64,000 bases of DNA, from the IMG/VR virus record IMGVR_UViG_3300043436_004687, positions 1 to 64,000 of that record; one strand, given 5' to 3'. The notes below the pieces were generated by a model, which was not told where the DNA came from, made no database searches, and saw only the letters and a program-made list of their open reading frames with translations. The position numbers and the translations under genes are program-made. This document shows positions 13,042 to 64,000 of the stretch, piece after piece. Numbering within the stretch: the first letter of the stretch is position 1; every line of letters begins with the position of its first letter.

Positions 13042-14250
13042 ATGCAATTAGTTGAATCACATATAATCAAACAAAATAACCCATTTTATTCTGAATGTAA
13101 TTCACTATGTTTTAACTCTAAAAACCTATATAATAGTTGTTTATATAAAGTAAGGCAAGCATATATAAATGATAATGTAAACATATTATATGATTTACAC
13201 CATCTTATGAAAGATACTGAACAATATAAAGCATTACCAGCTAAAGTGTCTTCTACTGTTCTACTAATGGTACAGAAAAATTTTAAATCATACTTTAAAG
13301 CAAATAGTGACTATTATAAAACACCATCTAAATATAAAGGCAAACCCAAATTACCTAAATATTTAAACACAACTAATGGTAAATTTTTTGTTTCTTATAC
13401 CAATCAAGCAATATCTAAAAAAGTATTCAAGAAAACAAATAAAATTAAATTATCTGGAAATAATATAGAATTTAAAACAAAAATAACCGATTTTAATCAA
13501 ATTAATTGTATTAGAATTATACCCAAATTAGGGTATAATGTAATTGAAGTTGTTTATACAATATCAGATGTGACTAAATTAGAAAATAATGATAAGTATT
13601 GTAGTATTGATTTAGGTGTTAATAATTTAGCTACCATAGGTAGTAATACTATTACACCATTTATAATAAATGGTAAACCTTTAAAAAGTATAAATCAATA
13701 CTATAATAAAAAATATGCTTATTATAAAAGCATATTAGAAAAGAGAAATAATAAAAAAACAAGTAACTATTTACATAAATTAAATTTAAAAAGAAAAAAT
13801 AAAATAGATAATTATTTACATAAAGGAAGCAAAGAAATTGTTAATATATGTAAAATAAATAATATTAATACACTTGTAATAGGTAAAAATGATGGATGGA
13901 AACAAGATATTAATATAGGAAAACAAAATAATCAAAATTTTGTTAATATACCTCATAGTAGATTTATAGATATGTTAAACTATAAATGCGAAAGAGAAGG
14001 TATAAATGTTATACTACAAGAGGAAAGTTATACTAGTAAATGTAGTTTTTTAGATGATGAGAGTATTAAAAAACATGATGTTTATAAGGGTAGCAGAATA
14101 AAAAGAGGATTATTTAAGAGTGCCAAAGGCACACTTATAAATGCTGATTTAAATGGTAGTTATAACATACTAAAAAAAGCAATCCCGAACGCTTTCGCTA
14201 ACGGGATAGAGGGTGTAGGAGTACATCCAAAGGTAATTACTTTAAAGTAA
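13042..14250 (+). mobile_element. tnpB: Solo IS200/IS605-family TnpB RNA-guided nuclease, inserted antisense; omegaRNA-like hairpins overlap its 3' end
   Basis: RuvC motifs IDLGVNNLA, QEESYTSK, NADLNGSYNI; ATCCCG/CGGGAT hairpin ~14182-14207; no tnpA. Confidence 0.92.
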
Positions 14251-49796: not shown

Positions 49797-50208
49797 TTTA
49801 TATATTTTAACACCAACGCATCATTTTATTACAATTAGGGCATTTTAAGTAATGATAAGTATCAGTACCCCCACCATAAGGTTCATTTTCCACTTTTTTG
49901 TCTACTTCATTCTCAAAATATTCTATTACTGCACCACAAGATGAATGAGTTCTTTGTTTAGCTTTTGATTTATCAATTTTTAAAACTTTTGCCATAATAC
50001 TTTGTTTTTAATTTATTGCAAATATAAGATTTTATATGCAAACTTCCAAATTATATTTTATTTATCTGAACCATAAATTAAAAGTTTATTGCATCACCTT
50101 AATGCTTTAGGGTTAATTACACACCAACCCCTTAGCCATTTAAGGGGTTGCTACCACTTCTTTATTTTTAATTTATTTATCATTTTATTTATTTTATTTG
50201 TTTTATTG

Positions 50209-50284
50209 TCGGGATAGCAGGGATCGAACCTGCGTGAATGTCCTACTCCCAAAGTAGGCGACTTACCAATTAGTCCATATCCCG
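50209..50284 (-). tRNA. tRNA-Pro(TGG)
   Basis: CGGGATA/TATCCCG acceptor; CCTAC-TTTGGGA-GTAGG; T-loop TTCGATC. Confidence 0.95.
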
Positions 50285-50292
50285 TGTTATTG

Positions 50293-50375
50293 TGGTGAGA
50301 TGAGGACTCGAACCTCTCCATTTTAATGACTAGATTTACAGTCTAGCTGCCATATCCAAATGACTTTATCGCACC
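50293..50375 (-). tRNA. tRNA-Tyr(GTA)
   Basis: CTAGA-CTGTAAA-TCTAG; long variable arm; T-loop TTCGAGT. Confidence 0.92.
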
Positions 50376-50388
50376 AATTTAATATAAT

Positions 50389-50428
50389 AAAAAAAACCCA
50401 GTTTAGATTTTTAATTCTAACTGGGTTT
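50389..50428 (-). terminator. Attenuator terminator A (upstream of tRNA-Tyr/Pro)
   Basis: AAACCCAGTTAGA/TCTAAACTGGGTTT stem plus U-run. Confidence 0.85.
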
Positions 50429-50465
50429 ATATTTTGTGGTTATAATTAACCAAAACTTAATATAT

Positions 50466-50558
50466 TTATGTGAAAATTTTTCCCATACCCAGTTTACCAT
50501 AAGGTCTATAACCTTTAGGTGTTTGCTGTTTTTGTTGATATGTGAAATTTGTATTCAT
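50466..50558 (-). CDS. Leader peptide A, MNTNFTYQQKQQTPKGYRPYGKLGMGKIFT
   Basis: 30 codons; 3 Tyr, 2 Pro, 4 Gln; contains antiterminator AAACTGGGT (50487-50495). Confidence 0.75.
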   Translation of the reverse strand: MNTNFTYQQKQQTPKGYRPYGKLGMGKIFT

Positions 50559-50640
50559 AGTTTTTATTTTTAATAAAATTTAGCGTGGTTTATTCAAAAC
50601 TCAAGGTTTATTGTATTTAACTCACAAATTTATAATCTCC

Positions 50641-50753
50641 TAATTTTATTGTTATTAATATATATATTGCAAATATAAGACAAAGTTTTATAATATACAA
50701 GCTTTTTTTAATTTATTTTTAAATTATTTTATAACTAATTGATAATCAAGTTA
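50641..50753 (-). repeat. Promoter block (TTG-N20-TATATTTG) repeated at 61201-61312
   Basis: About 110 nt near-identical to 61201-61312; both blocks precede leader-attenuator-tRNA units. Confidence 0.85.
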
Positions 50754-51126
50754 ATTAATTTTTCTTTTCCTTAAAATTTTTTCAGTAATTTTACCACCAT
50801 TTAAAATTTTCATCTTGGTGATTAATAAATTATTCAGATGTTGATATAAGGTGTCTTCTAATTCTAATTTTTCTTTTAATGAAATTAAACGATTTTTAGA
50901 TTCTAAATAGAGTAAATTAGATATGTGTTTTTTAAATTCACTATCTTCAACATTTTCCAATTTTTTAATAAGATTTGAATATGAAAAAATTAATTTAGAG
51001 ATTGGTTTAATTAAACTTTTATTTTCATTTAATTTATCCACAATATAAGGAAGCATAGAAAGAGTATTTCTATCTCCAAAGGTACCAGTTTCAATTAATT
51101 TAATTTTCATCTTAATATTATATTAG

Positions 51127-51196
51127 TATAGATTAAGGGATTCGAACCCTTGGTTATCAAAGTATTGGTTCAGCAAAACCACTCTGCCAAACCCAT
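51127..51196 (-). pseudogene. tRNA-Ser(GCT)-like sequence lacking the 3' half of the D-arm
   Basis: ATGGGTT/AATCTAT acceptor, TGGCAGAGTGG, TGGTT-TTGCTG-AACCA, AAGGG-TTCGAAT-CCCTT. Confidence 0.6.
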
Positions 51197-59122: not shown

Positions 59123-59685
59123 ACTTTATAAGTTGAGTTTGTTTTTTTAATTTTATTTATTTCTTCAGTTTCATCTAAAATATATTCCTCAAATTCATTA
59201 TGATTTAGTAAAAGTTTTTCATTTTCTTCCAACTCAAACATTTTTATTAAATTTTCATAATGGCGTGAATTATCTATAGGTTCGACCAAATCTAAATGAA
59301 TTTTAATACTTCCAGTAAACAAATCATCCAGTTGTTGACGAAGTTGCTTATCAGCCTCTATCTTATAGAGTTTAACTGCTTCTTGATACTCATCCTTATG
59401 TTTTTGATAATTCTCTTTTATTTTTGAAATTATATTTTCTTTGCTAATTGTAGTTTTCATAATTAATCATTTATTTAGTGCAAAGATAGTAATTAAAAAT
59501 TAATTGAACAAATTTATTTTTCTAAAAGTTCAATTATTTTTTTCTTGAAGTCTAAAATAACTTCATTGGCACTTTCCTCATCAAAAGTCGAAGTTATTAA
59601 TGAAATTAATTCTGAATCATCAAATATAAACTGTAGTTCTAGTAATTTTTTTTCTAATGTCATTTTAAATTAATTTATTTATTTG

Positions 59686-59757
59686 TACTCCCGAAGGGAA
59701 TCGAACCCTCCTTCCCAGGCTGAAAACCTGATGTCCTAACCGATAGACGACAGGAGC
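59686..59757 (-). tRNA. tRNA-Glu(TTC)
   Basis: GCTCCTG/CGGGAGT; TCAGG-TTTTCAG-CCTGG; T-loop TTCGATT. Confidence 0.95.
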
Positions 59758-59766
59758 ATAAAAATT

Positions 59767-59880
59767 AATCAAAAAGTCTTCGTCTCTCCTAGCTGGCCCA
59801 CTTGAGGATAAATCCTCGTGCCCGACTCGAACGGGAATGCTAGCGACTCAATCCAGCTTGCCATTTTCATGGTTTTGATT
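59767..59880 (-). ncRNA. GC-rich structured RNA with a T-loop, between tRNA-Asp and tRNA-Glu
   Basis: AATCAAAA/TTTTTGATT closure, AGCTGG/CCAGCT, CCCG-TTCGAGT-CGGG, GAGGA-TTTA-TCCTC. Confidence 0.6.
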
Positions 59881-59886
59881 AATTTA

Positions 59887-59961
59887 TGGCGGTCCTAGAG
59901 GGAATCGAACCCTCATCATGCCCGTGACAGGGGCGTATCCTAGCCATTGAACGATAGGACC
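59887..59961 (-). tRNA. tRNA-Asp(GTC), CCA encoded
   Basis: GGTCCTA/TAGGACC+G+CCA; GCCC-CTGTCAC-GGGC. Confidence 0.96.
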
Positions 59962-59963
59962 TT

Positions 59964-60797
59964 TTATTTTAACCATTTTCTTATAGCATTATCACTAACA
60001 CCATATTTCCTACCAGTTGCAGAATAACCTAATTGATCAACTTCTTTTAATAAAATCTCTTTACTAGGTCTATCTTTAACTTTTCTTAATTTAGTTGAAC
60101 TTTCGATTTGTTTATTAGTCCTCGCATTATTAATTAATTTTTCAGAATTTAATAATATTTTATCTTCATTTAATTTTTCAATCTTAACATATTTTATTTT
60201 TAATCTATTATGACCAATACAATGAGTTTTTGTTTGACTATGACAATTTGGGCATAAATATCTTAAATTTTCCAACCTATTATCACTATTATCACCATTA
60301 ATATGATCAATTTCTAATTTAATTTTATTTCCACACCAAATATCTATTATGCTACAATTTATATTACTACATTTATAAGATAATAATTTATCTTGAATAA
60401 TTCTTTTCTTTACTACATTTTTACTAACACTAGAATTTAAAATAAATATTTCATTATTAGTTAATATTCTACTGTATTTATTACCTCTATTATATTTATA
60501 TTTTAATATTGAAACATCAATTCCATATAACAAACAATATTTATCTAATGTTTGAAAATTCCCAGATTTTAATGTTATATTTAAATTTCTTAATACATCC
60601 GATTTACATTCTGATTTAGATATTGCATTAAGTAAATTTTCTTTAGTCCAATTATGTGTTCTTTTATAACCACTAGTATTTAAACCAAATTTTGTTAAAT
60701 TATATCTTATTTTACCCTCACTAACCTCAAAAAAGTTACTTAATTTTTTAATTGTATAACCCTCTTTAATTTTTTCTTTTAAAATTTCTATATCCAT
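59964..60797 (-). CDS. HNH homing endonuclease within a tRNA operon
   Basis: LEIDHINGDNSDNRLENLRYLCPNCHSQT; HTH-like ends. Confidence 0.9.
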   Translation of the reverse strand: MDIEILKEKIKEGYTIKKLSNFFEVSEGKIRYNLTKFGLNTSGYKRTHNWTKENLLNAISKSECKSDVLRNLNITLKSGNFQTLDKYCLLYGIDVSILKYKYNRGNKYSRILTNNEIFILNSSVSKNVVKKRIIQDKLLSYKCSNINCSIIDIWCGNKIKLEIDHINGDNSDNRLENLRYLCPNCHSQTKTHCIGHNRLKIKYVKIEKLNEDKILLNSEKLINNARTNKQIESSTKLRKVKDRPSKEILLKEVDQLGYSATGRKYGVSDNAIRKWLK

Positions 60798-60889
60798 ATC
60801 TTTTATTATAAATATAGAAACTTTAAAAAAAGTAAACTAAGTAAAGATAATAATTTAAATAACCCTATTATTACATAATTTACACTAAG

Positions 60890-60962
60890 TGAGTTCTATG
60901 GTATTCGAAACTATTCCCAATGCTCTTCAGGCATTTGTGCGCACCAGCTACACCAAAAACTC
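60890..60962 (-). tRNA. tRNA-Phe(GAA)
   Basis: GAGTTTT/AGAACTC; AATGC-CTGAAGA-GCATT. Confidence 0.9.
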
Positions 60963-60968
60963 TTTTTG

Positions 60969-61042
60969 TGGAGGATAACAAGATTCGAACTGTTGACCCC
61001 TTGCGTGCAAGGCAAGTGCTCTACCAACTAAGCTAATCCCCC
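60969..61042 (-). tRNA. tRNA-Ala(TGC)
   Basis: G3-U70 identity pair; CTTGC-CTTGCAC-GCAAG. Confidence 0.95.
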
Positions 61043-61051
61043 ATTTTATTC

Positions 61052-61088
61052 AAAAAAAAAAACTCAACCTAATTAAAAGTTGAGTTTT
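61052..61088 (-). terminator. Attenuator terminator B
   Basis: AAAACTCAACTT/AGGTTGAGTTTT stem plus long U-run. Confidence 0.88.
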
Positions 61089-61110: not shown

Positions 61111-61200
61111 TTAACTAAATTCCATACTCAACTTACCAAAGCCATAATCTTCAGCTATTGCTTCAAAAGCAAAATCAAATATGTTATTAAGTGTTTTCAT
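61111..61200 (-). CDS. Leader peptide B, MKTLNNIFDFAFEAIAEDYGFGKLSMEFS
   Basis: 29 codons; F/D/A/E are 11 of codons 8-21; antiterminator AAGTTGAGT at 61126-61134. Confidence 0.8.
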   Translation of the reverse strand: MKTLNNIFDFAFEAIAEDYGFGKLSMEFS

Positions 61201-61309
61201 AGTTTTTATTGTTATTAATATATAGTGCAAATATAAGATAAAGTTTTATAATATGCAAGTTTTTTTTAATTTATTTTTTAAATTATTTTATAACTAATTG
61301 ATAACCAAG

Positions 61310-61525
61310 TTACTTTTTACGCATTTTAGCTTGAAAAGTTTCCAATTTTTTAATCATTTGACCATCTGTTTTATCAAATACTGACCAAATTCCAGAGACC
61401 ATTGCCATAAGGGCACCACTAAGAGTTAAAAATGTTGCGGAATCTAAAACACCATAAGTTGTTAAAAATACACCAAGTGCTGTAAGCACATATCTAATTA
61501 TCGATAAAATTTGTTCTTTGTTCAT
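61310..61525 (-). CDS. Putative holin (two TM helices, basic C-terminus)
   Basis: EQILSIIRYVLTALGVFL..SGIWSVFDK, resembling Pam3-gp28-type holins. Confidence 0.6.
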   Translation of the reverse strand: MNKEQILSIIRYVLTALGVFLTTYGVLDSATFLTLSGALMAMVSGIWSVFDKTDGQMIKKLETFQAKMRKK

Positions 61526-61578: not shown

Positions 61579-61650
61579 TGGTAGTGAAGGTGGGATTCGA
61601 ACCCACAAACTCCCTGTTTCTAAGACAGAATACTCTACCGCTTCTTAAAT
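61579..61650 (-). pseudogene. 3' part of a tRNA (TAG anticodon, short variable loop, CCA) whose 5' acceptor strand lies at 63081-63087
   Basis: GCGGTAGAGT, TCTGT-CTTAGAA-ACAGG, GTGGG-TTCGAAT-CCCAC, CTTCACT-A-CCA; complementary GGTGAAG only beyond the tnpB element. Confidence 0.7.
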
Positions 61651-61751: not shown

Positions 61752-62894
61752 TTATTTTAATCCTAATAACCTAATTCCTTCATTCTTTATATTGATAGCT
61801 GCATTCAAATCCCTATTAATACTCAAATTACATTCACTACAATTATATAACCTATGTTTCAATTCTAAATCTATTTTTTTATTCCCACAACAACTACATA
61901 ATTTACTACTAGCAAACCATCTATCAATATCAACTAAATCCCTACCATACCATTCAGATTTATATTTAAGTATATTCTTAAATCTATTTAAACTCAATTC
62001 TTGTATAGATTTAGCTAATTTATGATTCTTCATCATACCACTTACATTTAAATTTTCAATTACTATAACTTGGTTATCATTTAGTAATTTATTTGCTACT
62101 TCATGTAAATAATTTTCTTTTTTATTAGTTAATTTTTCATTAAATTTAGCTAATTTTATTCTAGCTTTTTCTTTATTTTTACTACCATTTTCTTTTTTAC
62201 TTAAATTCTTATGTAATTTAGCTAACTTGTTTTTGTTATTTCTAATTATTTTTAAGTTATCATATTCTACACCATTTGAATCAACTATAAATGTTTTTAT
62301 TCCTAAATCAATTCCTACTATATTATTTTTAGGCGTATCTAATTCTAATAATTCATTTGAATCAACTAATATACTTAAAAAATATTTGTTTGATTTAGTT
62401 TTAGATAGTGTAGCTGATTTAATTCCTTCTTTATATTTGTTAAGATAATTAACATACTTATCTGACGTTCTAAATTTAATATCTTTTAATTGACTTGTAA
62501 GTGTTAACTTATTTGATAAATAATTATTTTTCTTAGATATTGCTTCTAATGGAAATCTACAACTTTGTATATTATCATGTTTTGATTTAAAATTAGGAAA
62601 CCCACTTCCATTTATAAAAAATCGTTTATAGCTATCTAACAAATTAATTACAGATTGTTTCAATACTTTGGTATTATGATTAGTTAACCAAATATAATCT
62701 GAATTTTTAGTTAGAGTTTGATGAAAATAGTTACCCAATTCTTTCAACCCCAAATTGCTTTTATCTTTTAAATAAGATTCTTTTTTAAGGGATAAGCAAT
62801 TATTAAATACGAATCGATAGCTACCAAACAAATCATTTAAATATGATTGTTGTGTAGTATTAGGGTATATACGTATTTTAATTGATTTTAACAT
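61752..62894 (-). mobile_element. tnpB: Solo IS200/IS605-family TnpB (HTH, RuvC, Zn finger) with downstream omegaRNA-like region
   Basis: KIRIYPN, GIDLGIK, VIENLNV, CSCCG..CSEC, RDLNAAINI. Confidence 0.95.
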
Positions 62895-63095
62895 AAAATT
62901 TTATGGGTATATTAATACCCTGTTATTATAAATATAAGAATAAATTTAAAAAGTTCAATATTATTATGTTAAATTTAGTTAAAATTATACATTATGGTTT
63001 TAAATCTATTTAATTGTTTATGTTTGTATAAGATTGTTTAGATAATTAGTTTCTGTTACTAACCCTTCGTTTTAATAGCACTTCACCATATTTTG

Positions 63096-63179
63096 TAACC
63101 CTGACAAGATTCGAACTTGCAACCCATTGAGGGACAGCATTCTAAGTGCTGCGTGTATAGCCATTTCCACCACAGAGCC
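63096..63179 (-). tRNA. tRNA-Leu(TAG)
   Basis: CAGCA-CTTAGAA-TGCTG; long variable arm; GCAAG-TTCGAAT-CTTGT. Confidence 0.92.
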
Positions 63180-63185
63180 TTCCTT

Positions 63186-63485
63186 TTATTTTAACTTAAT
63201 AAAATCTTCTTTTTCAATTGCTTTAGTAATCCATCTTATGAGTTCACTTCCTTTAATTTCACTATGAAACTCAGTTAAACCCAAATCCTCACTTAAAACA
63301 AGTGTATTGAAAGTTTCGGTTTGAAATGAATTGGAAACTTTTTTATGTTCAACTGTTGATATAGGAAATTGGAATGTTCCGTTAGATAAATCTATATTAT
63401 AAAATAACTTTCCATTATAATAATGAGAAAATTTAGCTAATGTTTTTAATTTGTATAATTCTTTTTTTATTTCTGTTGCATTCAT
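63186..63485 (-). CDS. Hypothetical protein inside the tRNA operon
   Basis: 99-aa ORF from the track, A-rich start. Confidence 0.65.
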   Translation of the reverse strand: MNATEIKKELYKLKTLAKFSHYYNGKLFYNIDLSNGTFQFPISTVEHKKVSNSFQTETFNTLVLSEDLGLTEFHSEIKGSELIRWITKAIEKEDFIKLK

Positions 63486-63515
63486 TTTTTTTTATGTATT
63501 TAATTTATTAATTAG

Positions 63516-63601
63516 AACTGGAAGTAGGATTCGAACCTACGGTGCACTTTTCAGTAATTAGGGTTGCAATCTAATGAATTCGACCACTTTTCTATTCCAG
63601 C
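63516..63601 (-). tRNA. tRNA-Cys(GCA) with an unusually long variable arm
   Basis: GCTGGAA/TTCCAGT, U73, loop TTGCAAC, 16-nt variable region, GTAGG-TTCGAAT-CCTAC. Confidence 0.85.
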
Positions 63602-63611
63602 ATTTGTTTAA

Positions 63612-63648
63612 AATAAAAAATCCGATTAAGTTTTAATTAATCGGATTT
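63612..63648 (-). terminator. Attenuator terminator C
   Basis: AAATCCGATTAA/TTAATCGGATTT stem plus U-run. Confidence 0.85.
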
Positions 63649-63670
63649 AAAATTGTTTTATAATTATTTC

Positions 63671-63775
63671 TTAATGAAAATAATTTATTTCAAATTCCGA
63701 TTCTTCCAACCCTAATAGGATCAGTGAAGTTAAACATAAGTTAAGCGCCAATTTGAATTTATTTACTACTTTCAT
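63671..63775 (-). CDS. Leader peptide C, MKVVNKFKLALNLCLTSLILLGLEESEFEINYFH
   Basis: 34 codons; 8 Leu (five different codons) and 1 Cys in codons 9-23; antiterminator AATCGGA at 63696-63702. Confidence 0.75.
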   Translation of the reverse strand: MKVVNKFKLALNLCLTSLILLGLEESEFEINYFH

Positions 63776-64000
63776 ATTTTTAATATTAGTTCTTTATTAA
63801 TATATAGTTTATTTTTCAAAAAAATAAATATTATTTATTAATTTTATTTAAAATTTGTATTGAATTTGATATTGTTGCTTCATTGGTGCTGTTTTCTAAC
63901 AACCAATTAACATAATTTATTAAATCAAATTTATTTATCTCATCAATTTTTTTATAATTATATTTACCACTAATGACATAAAATGTGTTGTTAGCCTTTC

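What the first reader, a model, noticed from the sequence alone, without database searches (positions are those of the whole stretch)
63096..63800. Attenuator C: Leu-rich leader with one Cys before tRNA-Cys and tRNA-Leu(TAG)
Leader 63671-63775 has 8 Leu codons in codons 9-23 using TTG, CTT, TTA, CTG and CTA, plus TGT. CUN codons are unexpected at this density in so AT-rich a genome. GAATCGGAATTT (63692-63703) can pair with AAATCCGATT of terminator 63612-63648. Its sequence is not obviously related to A/B, suggesting deep divergence or an independent origin of the same device.
Basis: partly seen in the sequence, partly recalled or inferred. Interest (0 to 1): 0.8.

Follow-up and report, generated by a model that had tools for sequence, protein, structure and literature searches.

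The report
Leader-peptide attenuator before phage tRNA genes
A large phage of Bacteroidota-type bacteria places a short coding frame and a transcription stop signal in front of its tRNA genes, and the frame is rich in the codons those tRNAs read, so the phage probably makes more of a tRNA only when ribosomes run short of it, a form of control not described for tRNA genes in the papers searched.

Summary
On the minus strand a 34-codon ORF (63671-63775) is followed by a strong intrinsic terminator (63618-63648 plus a U-tract). A tRNA with anticodon GCA starts 16 nt after the stem, and tRNA-Leu(UAG) lies further on. ORF codons 25-30 can pair with the terminator's 5' arm. A second pairing, between the ORF's start and that same segment, gives the classical 1:2 / 2:3 / 3:4 layout. 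The terminator and antiterminator states are almost equal in energy (-29.3 and -29.0 kcal/mol).

On its own, C is only moderately convincing: 4 of 33 codons are cognate (P=0.019), or 9 of 34 residues are Leu or Cys (P=0.008). The case rests on eight further devices of the same anatomy: A and B in this window, three in the uncultured phage LR756500.1, and three in Cellulophaga phage phi17:2. In eight of the nine devices the leader matches its own downstream tRNA set better than any other set. The match is codon-specific (Fisher P about 4e-17; no shuffled pairing does as well).

Verdict: C is most likely a ribosome-mediated attenuator that gives tRNA supply a feedback loop. This is a known mechanism applied to a new class of target. 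C is the weakest member of the set.

The parts
63671..63775 (-). Leader ORF C: 34 codons, A-rich start context without a Shine-Dalgarno sequence, stop TAA
   Evidence: no Pfam family; no Rfam family
63707..63751 (-). Regulatory codon block, codons 9-23. Eight Leu codons including CTT (codon 11), CTG (18) and CTA (20), plus TGT (14). These four are readable by the two downstream tRNAs.
   Evidence: With a ribosome's A site on any of these codons up to codon 21, the terminator's 5' arm stays sequestered.
63687..63703 (-). Region 2, the antiterminator 5' strand (codons 25-30). It pairs with the 5' arm of the terminator.
63750..63775 (-). Region 1 (start codon to codon 9). It pairs with region 2 and the stop-codon hairpin in the terminator-permitting fold.
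   Evidence: fold of the transcript up to just before the 5' arm, and the fold with the terminator forced (-29.3 kcal/mol)
63607..63648 (-). Intrinsic terminator (regions 3 and 4): 12-bp stem, 7-nt loop, U-tract
63515..63601 (-). First regulated gene: tRNA with anticodon GCA and U73. It has a class-II long variable arm. It starts 16 nt after the terminator stem, with no promoter in between.
63186..63485 (-). 99-aa ORF of unknown function lying between the two tRNAs
63095..63179 (-). Second regulated gene: tRNA-Leu(UAG), which reads CUN codons
61043..61320 (-). Sister device B: promoter, 29-codon leader (61111-61200), terminator (61059-61088). It precedes tRNA-Ala, tRNA-Phe, an HNH ORF, tRNA-Asp and tRNA-Glu (59685-61042).
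50376..50760 (-). Sister device A: the same promoter as B, 30-codon leader (50466-50558), terminator (50394-50428). It precedes tRNA-Tyr and tRNA-Pro (50208-50375).

Best explanation
Device C is a ribosome-mediated (leader-peptide) transcription attenuator. It gates read-through into a small phage tRNA operon made of tRNA(GCA) and tRNA-Leu(UAG). It belongs to a set of such devices in one group of large phages that infect Bacteroidota-type hosts.

Inferred steps:
- Transcripts arriving from the upstream genes carry the 34-codon leader, which ribosomes translate.
- If charged tRNAs for the Leu and Cys codons in codons 9-21 are short, the ribosome stalls there. Codons 25-30 (region 2) stay free and pair with the terminator's 5' arm as it emerges. 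The terminator cannot form, and RNA polymerase runs on into the tRNA genes.
- If decoding is fast, the ribosome covers region 2 while the terminator is being made. Once the ribosome has passed, region 2 may instead be captured by region 1. The terminator forms and transcription stops 16 nt before the tRNA.
- The result is negative feedback: the phage makes these tRNAs when decoding of their codons is limiting, and stops when supply is adequate.

Shown directly: the anatomy, the alternative pairings and their energies, the codon match, and the recurrence in other phages. Inferred only: translation of the leader, coupling of the ribosome to RNA polymerase, and the response to tRNA supply.
For: Anatomy: ORF, terminator and tRNA lie in direct succession with no promoter between terminator and tRNA.

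Alternative folds: in the minimum-energy fold of the nascent transcript, the terminator's 5' arm pairs with codons 25-30. The terminator state with 1:2 pairing (-29.3 kcal/mol) and the antiterminator state (-29.0) are nearly equal in energy.

Ribosome-mask scan: with the A site on codons 2-21, the 5' arm is sequestered at about 0.6-0.8. On codons 22-31 this falls to about 0.2-0.4. The last cognate codon (CTA, codon 20) lies just before the switch. The same holds in all nine devices.

Codon match: for C, P=0.019 (codons) and P=0.008 (amino acids). Own-set P values for all nine devices are 0.057, 0.0024, 0.019, 3e-4, 6.5e-7, 0.002, 0.0036, 4.6e-4 and 0.0049. The own set ranks first in eight of nine. 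Fisher combined P is 4e-17, and none of 200,000 shuffled leader-to-operon pairings reaches the observed score.

Codon-level specificity in the sister devices:
- The phi17:2 unit 1 leader has 11 consecutive codons that cover exactly its seven tRNAs, with CGT for Arg(ACG) and CTA for Leu(UAG).
- Unit 2 uses AGA with Arg(UCU).
- The LR756500 leader before tRNA-His uses CTT and CTA, with no TTA, ahead of Leu(UAG).
- The LR756500 leader before tRNA-Ala uses only TTA ahead of Leu(UAA).
- phi17:2 unit 3 has two TGT codons and ends with a tRNA-like gene bearing a GCA anticodon, which parallels C.

Antiterminator complementarity against shuffles: 0.0165, 0.0035 and 0.05 in the window; 0.0055, 0.05 and 0.22 in LR756500.

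Host type: the nearest relatives are Cellulophaga phages, and the promoters are of the TTTG...TAnnTTTG type.
Against: C is the weakest of the nine devices.
- Five of its eight Leu codons are UUR, which tRNA-Leu(UAG) cannot read. No tRNA-Leu(UAA or CAA) lies in the window or in the next 12 kb.
- CUN is not significantly enriched among the Leu codons themselves (P=0.16).
- C has no recognisable promoter of its own and follows three ORFs, so its terminator could simply end that unit.
- The Leu-rich stretch also looks like a signal peptide or membrane helix.
- The ORF runs 21 nt beyond the core of region 2, so a ribosome parked on the stop codon no longer masks it in the simple model. The off state then depends on timing or on the 1:2 pairing.
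- No close relative of this phage was found, so conservation of C itself could not be tested.
- There are no expression data. All structure calculations are at equilibrium, not kinetic.
Confidence: 0.68

Rival explanations
1. C is an ordinary end of an operon. The terminator closes the upstream three-gene unit. The 34-codon ORF is either a real small hydrophobic or secreted peptide or a chance frame. The tRNAs are made by leaky read-through. The Leu richness comes from hydrophobicity, not from sensing.
For: C has no promoter of its own and directly follows ORFs of 72, 114 and 137 aa. The peptide has a positively charged N-terminus followed by a 17-residue hydrophobic run. Elsewhere in these phages, tRNAs lie directly after ordinary gene terminators without any leader, for example LR756500 tRNA-Met at 91220 and tRNA-Arg at 78771. 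C's own statistics are modest.
Against: This reading does not explain why the terminator's 5' arm has its best upstream complement inside the last third of this ORF, as in the eight other devices. It does not explain why the rare codons CTG, CTA, CTT and TGT occur just before the switch point. It does not explain why both amino acids match the two tRNAs that follow. The peptide has no Pfam family, and the JGI gene caller did not call it. A 34-codon open frame has roughly a 4% chance per frame at this base composition (my estimate).
Confidence: 0.17
2. C is a decaying relic of an attenuator. It once controlled a larger tRNA operon that included a UUR-reading tRNA-Leu. It has since lost its promoter and some tRNAs through insertion-sequence and homing-endonuclease traffic, and it now regulates little.
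For: Five UUR codons have no cognate tRNA downstream. An IS605-type TnpB element sits directly after tRNA-Leu(UAG), next to a tRNA-like remnant. Leader A likewise fits a larger tRNA set than the one it now precedes. The promoter that A and B share is absent from C apart from 13 nt.
Against: The ORF is intact. The terminator is perfect (12 of 12 pairs). The antiterminator and 1:2 pairings are balanced to within 0.3 kcal/mol. That balance is not what one expects of a part drifting without selection.
Confidence: 0.1
3. The small ORFs act after transcription. Ribosome position on the leader would control processing or stability of the tRNA precursor, for example access of RNase E, III or P to the hairpin, rather than termination by RNA polymerase.
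For: The hairpins lie 10-70 nt from the tRNA 5' ends, where precursor processing occurs. In LR756500 a conserved GTTCTTTGR motif follows each terminator.
Against: Every hairpin is followed by a U-tract typical of intrinsic terminators. The mutually exclusive pairing has the classical attenuator geometry.
Confidence: 0.05

Closest known systems
Classical leader-peptide transcription attenuators of amino-acid biosynthesis operons (trpL, hisL, leuL, pheL, thrL, ilvL), and the Bacteroidota Trp leader motif in Rfam (from my own knowledge)
   Same: A short ORF enriched in regulatory codons. A 1:2 / 2:3 / 3:4 set of alternative hairpins. An intrinsic terminator before the regulated genes. Ribosome position as the sensor. 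Leaders carrying several amino acids also exist (thrL: Thr and Ile; ilvL: Ile, Leu and Val).
   Different: Here the regulated genes are tRNAs, not enzymes, so the product feeds straight back on the signal being sensed. The leaders list up to nine different amino acids, matched codon by codon to the tRNA set. The devices are phage-encoded. No Rfam leader family matches.
pheM leader of the E. coli pheST operon (phenylalanyl-tRNA synthetase) (from my own knowledge)
   Same: Leader-peptide attenuation that controls a component of the translation apparatus serving the sensed codons.
   Different: It controls a synthetase protein and senses one amino acid. It is cellular, not viral.
T-box riboswitches (from my own knowledge)
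   Same: Terminator/antiterminator switches that respond to the state of a specific tRNA and control genes of the aminoacylation system.
   Different: A T-box binds uncharged tRNA directly and needs no translation. No T-box fold or specifier loop is present here (no Rfam hit).
Cysteine-rich small ORFs in mycobacteria that respond to tRNA-Cys cleavage by the VapC4 toxin (Barth et al. 2021, seen only as an entry in the reference list of PMC10264068; what the ORFs do is from its title and my own knowledge)
   Same: Small ORFs that turn the depletion of a particular tRNA into a change in gene expression.
   Different: They control stress and cysteine genes, not the tRNA itself, and they are cellular.
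Small ORFs scattered through the phage T5 tRNA region, and the crAss001 tRNA array
   Same: Phage tRNA arrays interspersed with short ORFs and homing-endonuclease genes.
   Different: No terminator follows those ORFs, and their composition does not match the downstream tRNAs. The device is therefore not a general property of phage tRNA arrays.

Membership tests
Ribosome-mediated (leader-peptide) transcription attenuator | Short translatable ORF upstream of the regulated genes, on the same transcript | tested here: met
   34-codon ATG...TAA frame at 63671-63775 with an A-rich start context typical of Bacteroidota. Translation itself has not been shown.
Ribosome-mediated (leader-peptide) transcription attenuator | Enrichment of codons whose decoding relates to the regulated genes | tested here: met
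   C: 4 of 33 cognate codons (P=0.019) and 9 of 34 Leu or Cys residues (P=0.008). Across the nine devices Fisher P=4e-17, and the own set ranks first in eight of nine. Weak point: the five UUR codons of C have no cognate tRNA downstream.
Ribosome-mediated (leader-peptide) transcription attenuator | Intrinsic terminator between the leader and the regulated genes | tested here: met
   12-bp stem plus U-tract at 63607-63648, -11.4 kcal/mol. The tRNA starts 16 nt after the stem.
Ribosome-mediated (leader-peptide) transcription attenuator | An antiterminator pairing that excludes the terminator and is masked by a ribosome that has passed the regulatory codons | tested here: met
   Codons 25-30 pair with the terminator's 5' arm. 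Sequestration falls from about 0.7 to about 0.2-0.4 once the A site passes codon 21. Caveat: masking is lost again at the stop codon in C.
Ribosome-mediated (leader-peptide) transcription attenuator | A 1:2 hairpin that holds region 2 when the leader is not being translated | tested here: inconclusive
   Pairing of the ORF start with region 2 appears in the fold of the transcript made before the terminator's 5' arm, and in the terminator-forced fold (-29.3 against -29.0 kcal/mol). At equilibrium without a ribosome, the 2:3 pairing still dominates (0.83). Kinetics were not modelled.
Ribosome-mediated (leader-peptide) transcription attenuator | Read-through rises when the cognate charged tRNA is limiting | not testable with these tools
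   This needs reporter assays, term-seq or ribosome profiling in an infected host.
Curated Rfam leader or riboswitch families (Leu, His, Thr and Trp leaders, T-box and others) | Match to the family covariance model | tested here: not met
   Only tRNA hits reach the gathering score across the whole window. Nothing relevant appears at E<=1 in 63560-63860.

The most novel reading that the evidence does not exclude
One group of large phages of Bacteroidota hosts (this 340-kb phage, LR756500.1, and the cultured Cellulophaga phages phi17:2 and phi4:1) divides its tRNA arrays into operons. Each operon is gated by a leader peptide that acts as a codon catalogue of the tRNAs behind it. This would be a self-tuning tRNA supply: any tRNA of the set that becomes limiting switches its operon on. 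The shortage could come from codon-usage mismatch with the host, from host shut-off, or from host anticodon nucleases used as defence. It would be the first case of tRNA genes controlled by leader-peptide attenuation. It would also let the phage detect tRNA-targeting defence.
Probability: 0.6. Interest if true: 0.9.

Novelty: new variant of a known kind. Interest (0 to 1): 0.85.

Why it matters
Why phages carry tRNAs, and how they set tRNA levels, has been debated for decades. The main ideas are compensation for codon usage and replacement of host tRNAs destroyed during infection or by defence nucleases. An attenuator whose leader lists the codons of the tRNAs it controls would show that the phage measures decoding capacity codon by codon and responds by making the matching tRNAs. 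Regulated, demand-driven tRNA expression would then be directly testable.

The test system exists. Cellulophaga baltica with phage phi17:2 or phi4:1 is a cultured pair that carries three clear devices. The devices also give a simple rule for reading which tRNAs belong to one transcription unit. Where leader and operon disagree (leader A, and the UUR codons of leader C), the mismatch may record past gain and loss of tRNAs. Finally, the leaders offer compact natural sensors of the supply of specific tRNAs for use in Bacteroidota.

Tried and rejected
- Close relatives of the C locus. Scans of IMG/VR with the 99-aa ORF, a 29-nt piece of the tRNA(GCA), and the promoter shared by A and B returned only this contig. 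blastn against GenBank phages matched only the tRNA-Leu. Conservation or covariation of C itself could therefore not be tested.
- phi4:1 against phi17:2. The three devices are nearly identical, with one synonymous Gln change, so they carry no covariation signal.
- More tRNAs upstream of C. There are none in the next 12 kb of the contig.
- A promoter for C. There is no TAnnTTTG-type box between the 137-aa ORF and the leader. A candidate motif, AATAAACTAT, is not over-represented.
- Known RNA and protein families. Rfam and Pfam gave nothing for the leader region or the peptides.
- Generality. The T5 and crAss001 tRNA arrays were inspected and lack the device.
- The idea that the tRNA(GCA) is a misread tRNA-Leu(CAA). 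I rejected it: the Rfam alignment gives a standard 7-nt loop with U33, anticodon GCA and A37, and the discriminator base is U73.
- Rebuilding a tRNA from the two flanks of the IS element. ARAGORN accepted many different junctions, so the result is not decisive.
- Literature. Ten full-text searches found no description of leader-peptide attenuators before tRNA genes. The library lacks most subscription journals, so absence is not proof.

Full report
**Source and setting.** The window is the first 64 kb of IMG/VR contig IMGVR_UViG_3300043436_004687 (339,635 bp). The same phage was assembled from a second JGI sample. The sequence has about 25% G+C, and almost all genes lie on the minus strand. 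A conserved 709-aa protein finds its best matches in the uncultured 462-kb phage LR756500.1 (65% identity) and in Cellulophaga baltica phages phi17:2 and phi4:1 (49%). Promoter-like sequences before several units have the Bacteroidota form TTTG...TAnnTTTG. A Bacteroidota host, probably a flavobacterium, is therefore likely, though this is an inference.

**The observation.**
- The ORF at 63671-63775 has 34 codons. Eight Leu codons fall in codons 9-23 (TTG, CTT, TTA, TTA, CTG, CTA, TTA, TTG), and TGT is codon 14.
- A 12-bp hairpin with a U-tract lies at 63607-63648.
- A tRNA with anticodon GCA (63515-63601) starts 16 nt after the stem.
- A 99-aa ORF and tRNA-Leu(UAG) (63095-63179) follow.
- GAATCGGAATTT (63703-63692) is complementary, with one bulge, to the terminator's 5' arm.

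**Structure of C.** The minimum-energy fold of the leader transcript already contains the antiterminator: codons 25-30 pair with the terminator's 5' arm around a small hairpin that spans the stop codon.
- Folding the growing transcript shows that, before the 5' arm is made, region 2 pairs with the start of the ORF (a 1:2 pairing).
- On the full transcript, the state with 1:2 pairing plus terminator (-29.3 kcal/mol) and the antiterminator state (-29.0) are almost equal. This is the classical three-hairpin logic.
- I masked a 30-nt ribosome footprint at each codon and measured how far the 5' arm is sequestered before the 3' arm exists. Sequestration is about 0.6-0.8 with the A site on codons 2-21 and about 0.2-0.4 on codons 22-31. 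The last cognate codon (CTA, codon 20) sits just before the switch.
- One weakness: at the stop codon the mask no longer covers region 2. The off state in C must then rely on timing or on the 1:2 pairing.

**Statistics for C alone.** Leu plus Cys make up 9 of 34 residues against 10.7% background (P=0.008). Codons readable by the two tRNAs make up 4 of 33 against 3.1% (P=0.019). CUN is 3 of 33 against 1.7% (P=0.018), but three CUN among eight Leu codons is not significant (P=0.16). Complementarity to the terminator arm gives P=0.05 against shuffles. On these figures alone, C would be only suggestive.

**The sister devices carry the case.** Devices A and B in the window share a roughly 120-nt promoter that occurs only twice in IMG/VR. 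Each has a 29-30-codon ORF, a terminator, and tRNAs within about 20 nt.
- Leader B contains a run of 11 codons, 10 of which encode Phe, Asp, Ala or Glu. It precedes tRNA-Ala, Phe, Asp and Glu (P=0.0024).
- Leader A has Tyr-Arg-Pro-Tyr and precedes tRNA-Tyr and Pro (P=0.057).

I then read the whole of LR756500.1 and found three more devices.
- A 24-codon leader rich in His, Trp, Glu, Val and the codons CTT and CTA precedes tRNA-His, Glu, Val, Trp and Leu(UAG) (11 of 23 codons, P=3e-4).
- A 22-codon leader has 18 of 21 codons cognate to the eight tRNAs that follow: Ala, Leu(UAA), Pro, Tyr, Gln, Gly, Thr and Gly (P=6.5e-7).
- A 23-codon leader rich in Asn and Asp, with AGA AGA and ATA ATA, precedes tRNA-Asn, Asp, Arg(UCU) and a CAU tRNA (P=0.002).

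In Cellulophaga phage phi17:2 the 22-tRNA array is split into three units. Each has a promoter, a leader and a terminator.
- Unit 1's leader has 11 consecutive codons that cover exactly its seven tRNAs, using CGT for Arg(ACG) and CTA for Leu(UAG).
- Unit 2's leader lies inside the annotated gp077 and has 22 of 26 codons cognate to its ten tRNAs, using AGA for Arg(UCU).
- Unit 3's leader lists Asn, Tyr, Ser, Trp and Phe, plus two TGT codons. The unit ends with a tRNA-like gene whose anticodon is GCA.
- Phage phi4:1 carries the same three devices almost unchanged.

**Joint test.** Across the nine devices the own-set P values combine to 4e-17. Each leader's own tRNA set ranks first among the nine sets in eight cases. 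None of 200,000 random re-pairings of leaders and operons reaches the observed score. In all nine devices, the best partner of the terminator's 5' arm lies in the last third of the ORF or over its stop codon. The ribosome-mask switch follows the block of cognate codons. The nine leaders are unrelated in sequence and sit before different tRNA sets. The shared relationship is hard to explain except by function.

**Mechanism.** The best-supported reading is ribosome-mediated attenuation that gives negative feedback on tRNA supply. Slow decoding of any codon in the catalogue keeps the ribosome upstream of region 2. The antiterminator forms and the operon is transcribed. Fast decoding lets the terminator form. 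Shown here: the parts, the pairings and energies, the codon match, and the recurrence. Inferred: leader translation, coupling to RNA polymerase, and the response to tRNA level. The trigger during infection could be codon-usage mismatch, host shut-off, or host nucleases that cut tRNAs. The last idea draws on the proposal in PMC10264068 that phage tRNAs replace tRNAs lost to anticodon nucleases. It is speculation here.

**What is special, and weaker, about C.**
- C lacks the promoter that A and B have and follows ORFs of 72, 114 and 137 aa. The promoter for that unit lies about 1.2 kb upstream.
- Five UUR Leu codons have no cognate phage tRNA in the operon, in the rest of the window, or in the next 12 kb.
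- Leader A shows a similar mismatch. It fits the eight-tRNA set of LR756500's Ala operon better than its own two tRNAs. This suggests that leaders can outlast tRNAs lost from their operons.
- An IS605-type TnpB element and a tRNA-like remnant lie directly after tRNA-Leu(UAG). C may therefore once have controlled a larger set.
- The hydrophobic look of the peptide keeps the small-membrane-protein rival alive. That rival does not explain the pairing geometry or the Cys and CUN match.

**Comparison with known systems.** The mechanism is that of the classical amino-acid operon attenuators and of pheM-pheST. The target, and the many-codon catalogue leaders, are new as far as I could establish. No Rfam family matches. 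Ten literature searches found no description, but the library lacks most subscription journals. The T5 and crAss001 tRNA arrays lack the device, so it is a trait of one phage group and not of phage tRNA arrays in general.

**Verdict.**
- Confidence that the class of device is real: about 0.85.
- Confidence that C itself is a working member: about 0.68.
- Novelty: a new variant of a known kind.
- Interest: high, because the device makes demand-driven control of phage tRNA genes directly testable in a cultured phage-host pair.

Noticed in passing
window 63515-63601 (-): The tRNA called Cys has anticodon GCA and discriminator U73, both marks of Cys identity. It also has a 17-nt class-II variable arm, like Leu, Ser and Tyr tRNAs (87 nt in all). 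No similar tRNA was found in GenBank phages.
   Followed up: partly
window 61582-61639 (-), 61752-62894 (-), about 63081-63087 (-): An IS605-type TnpB gene sits directly after tRNA-Leu(UAG). On its 3' side lies a tRNA-like sequence without a D arm, with a UAG anticodon loop and an encoded CCA end. A heptamer complementary to its 3' acceptor strand lies on the far side of the element. This may be a tRNA gene split by the insertion, but the junction could not be fixed.
   Followed up: partly
window 51127-51196 (-): A tRNA-like sequence passes the Rfam threshold (34.7 bits) but lacks a proper anticodon arm. ARAGORN does not call it. It lies upstream of promoter A.
   Followed up: partly
window 50466-50558 (-): Leader A contains many Thr, Gln, Gly and Lys codons. 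It fits the eight-tRNA set of LR756500's Ala operon better than its own tRNA-Tyr and tRNA-Pro, which suggests tRNAs were lost from operon A.
   Followed up: partly
window 50640-50760 and 61205-61320 (-): A and B share a nearly identical promoter block of about 120 nt. It occurs only twice in the contig and nowhere else in IMG/VR.
   Followed up: yes
window 59964-60797 (-): An HNH endonuclease ORF lies inside tRNA operon B, between tRNA-Phe and tRNA-Asp. Endonuclease-like ORFs also interrupt the arrays of LR756500, T5 and crAss001.
   Followed up: no
LR756500.1 about 65690, 87370 and 118860 (minus strand; L008, L009): A motif GTTCTTTGR follows each of the three attenuator terminators by 10-20 nt, before the first tRNA. 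Its function is unknown.
   Followed up: no
LR756500.1 100287-100340 (minus strand; L009): A longer ORF ends in a Ser-rich tail: 9 Ser in the last 17 codons, using both AGT and TCN. It ends directly before tRNA-Ser(GCU) and tRNA-Ser(UGA), with no terminator between. This may be a different way of coupling decoding to tRNA expression.
   Followed up: no
LR756500.1 110652-110720 (L001 4220-4288) and L001 about 3105: A tRNA with anticodon CUA and an in-frame TAG early in a nearby ORF suggest that this relative reads the amber codon as sense. The window phage shows no such sign.
   Followed up: no
window 61310-61525 (-); contig 64877-66154 (L002 126-1403, opposite strand): The 71-aa ORF upstream of promoter B carries the Pfam family Phage_holin_10. 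Just beyond the window lies a second TnpB-like gene of 425 aa (Pfam SSO2105_N) on the other strand. A third lies at window 13042-14250.
   Followed up: no
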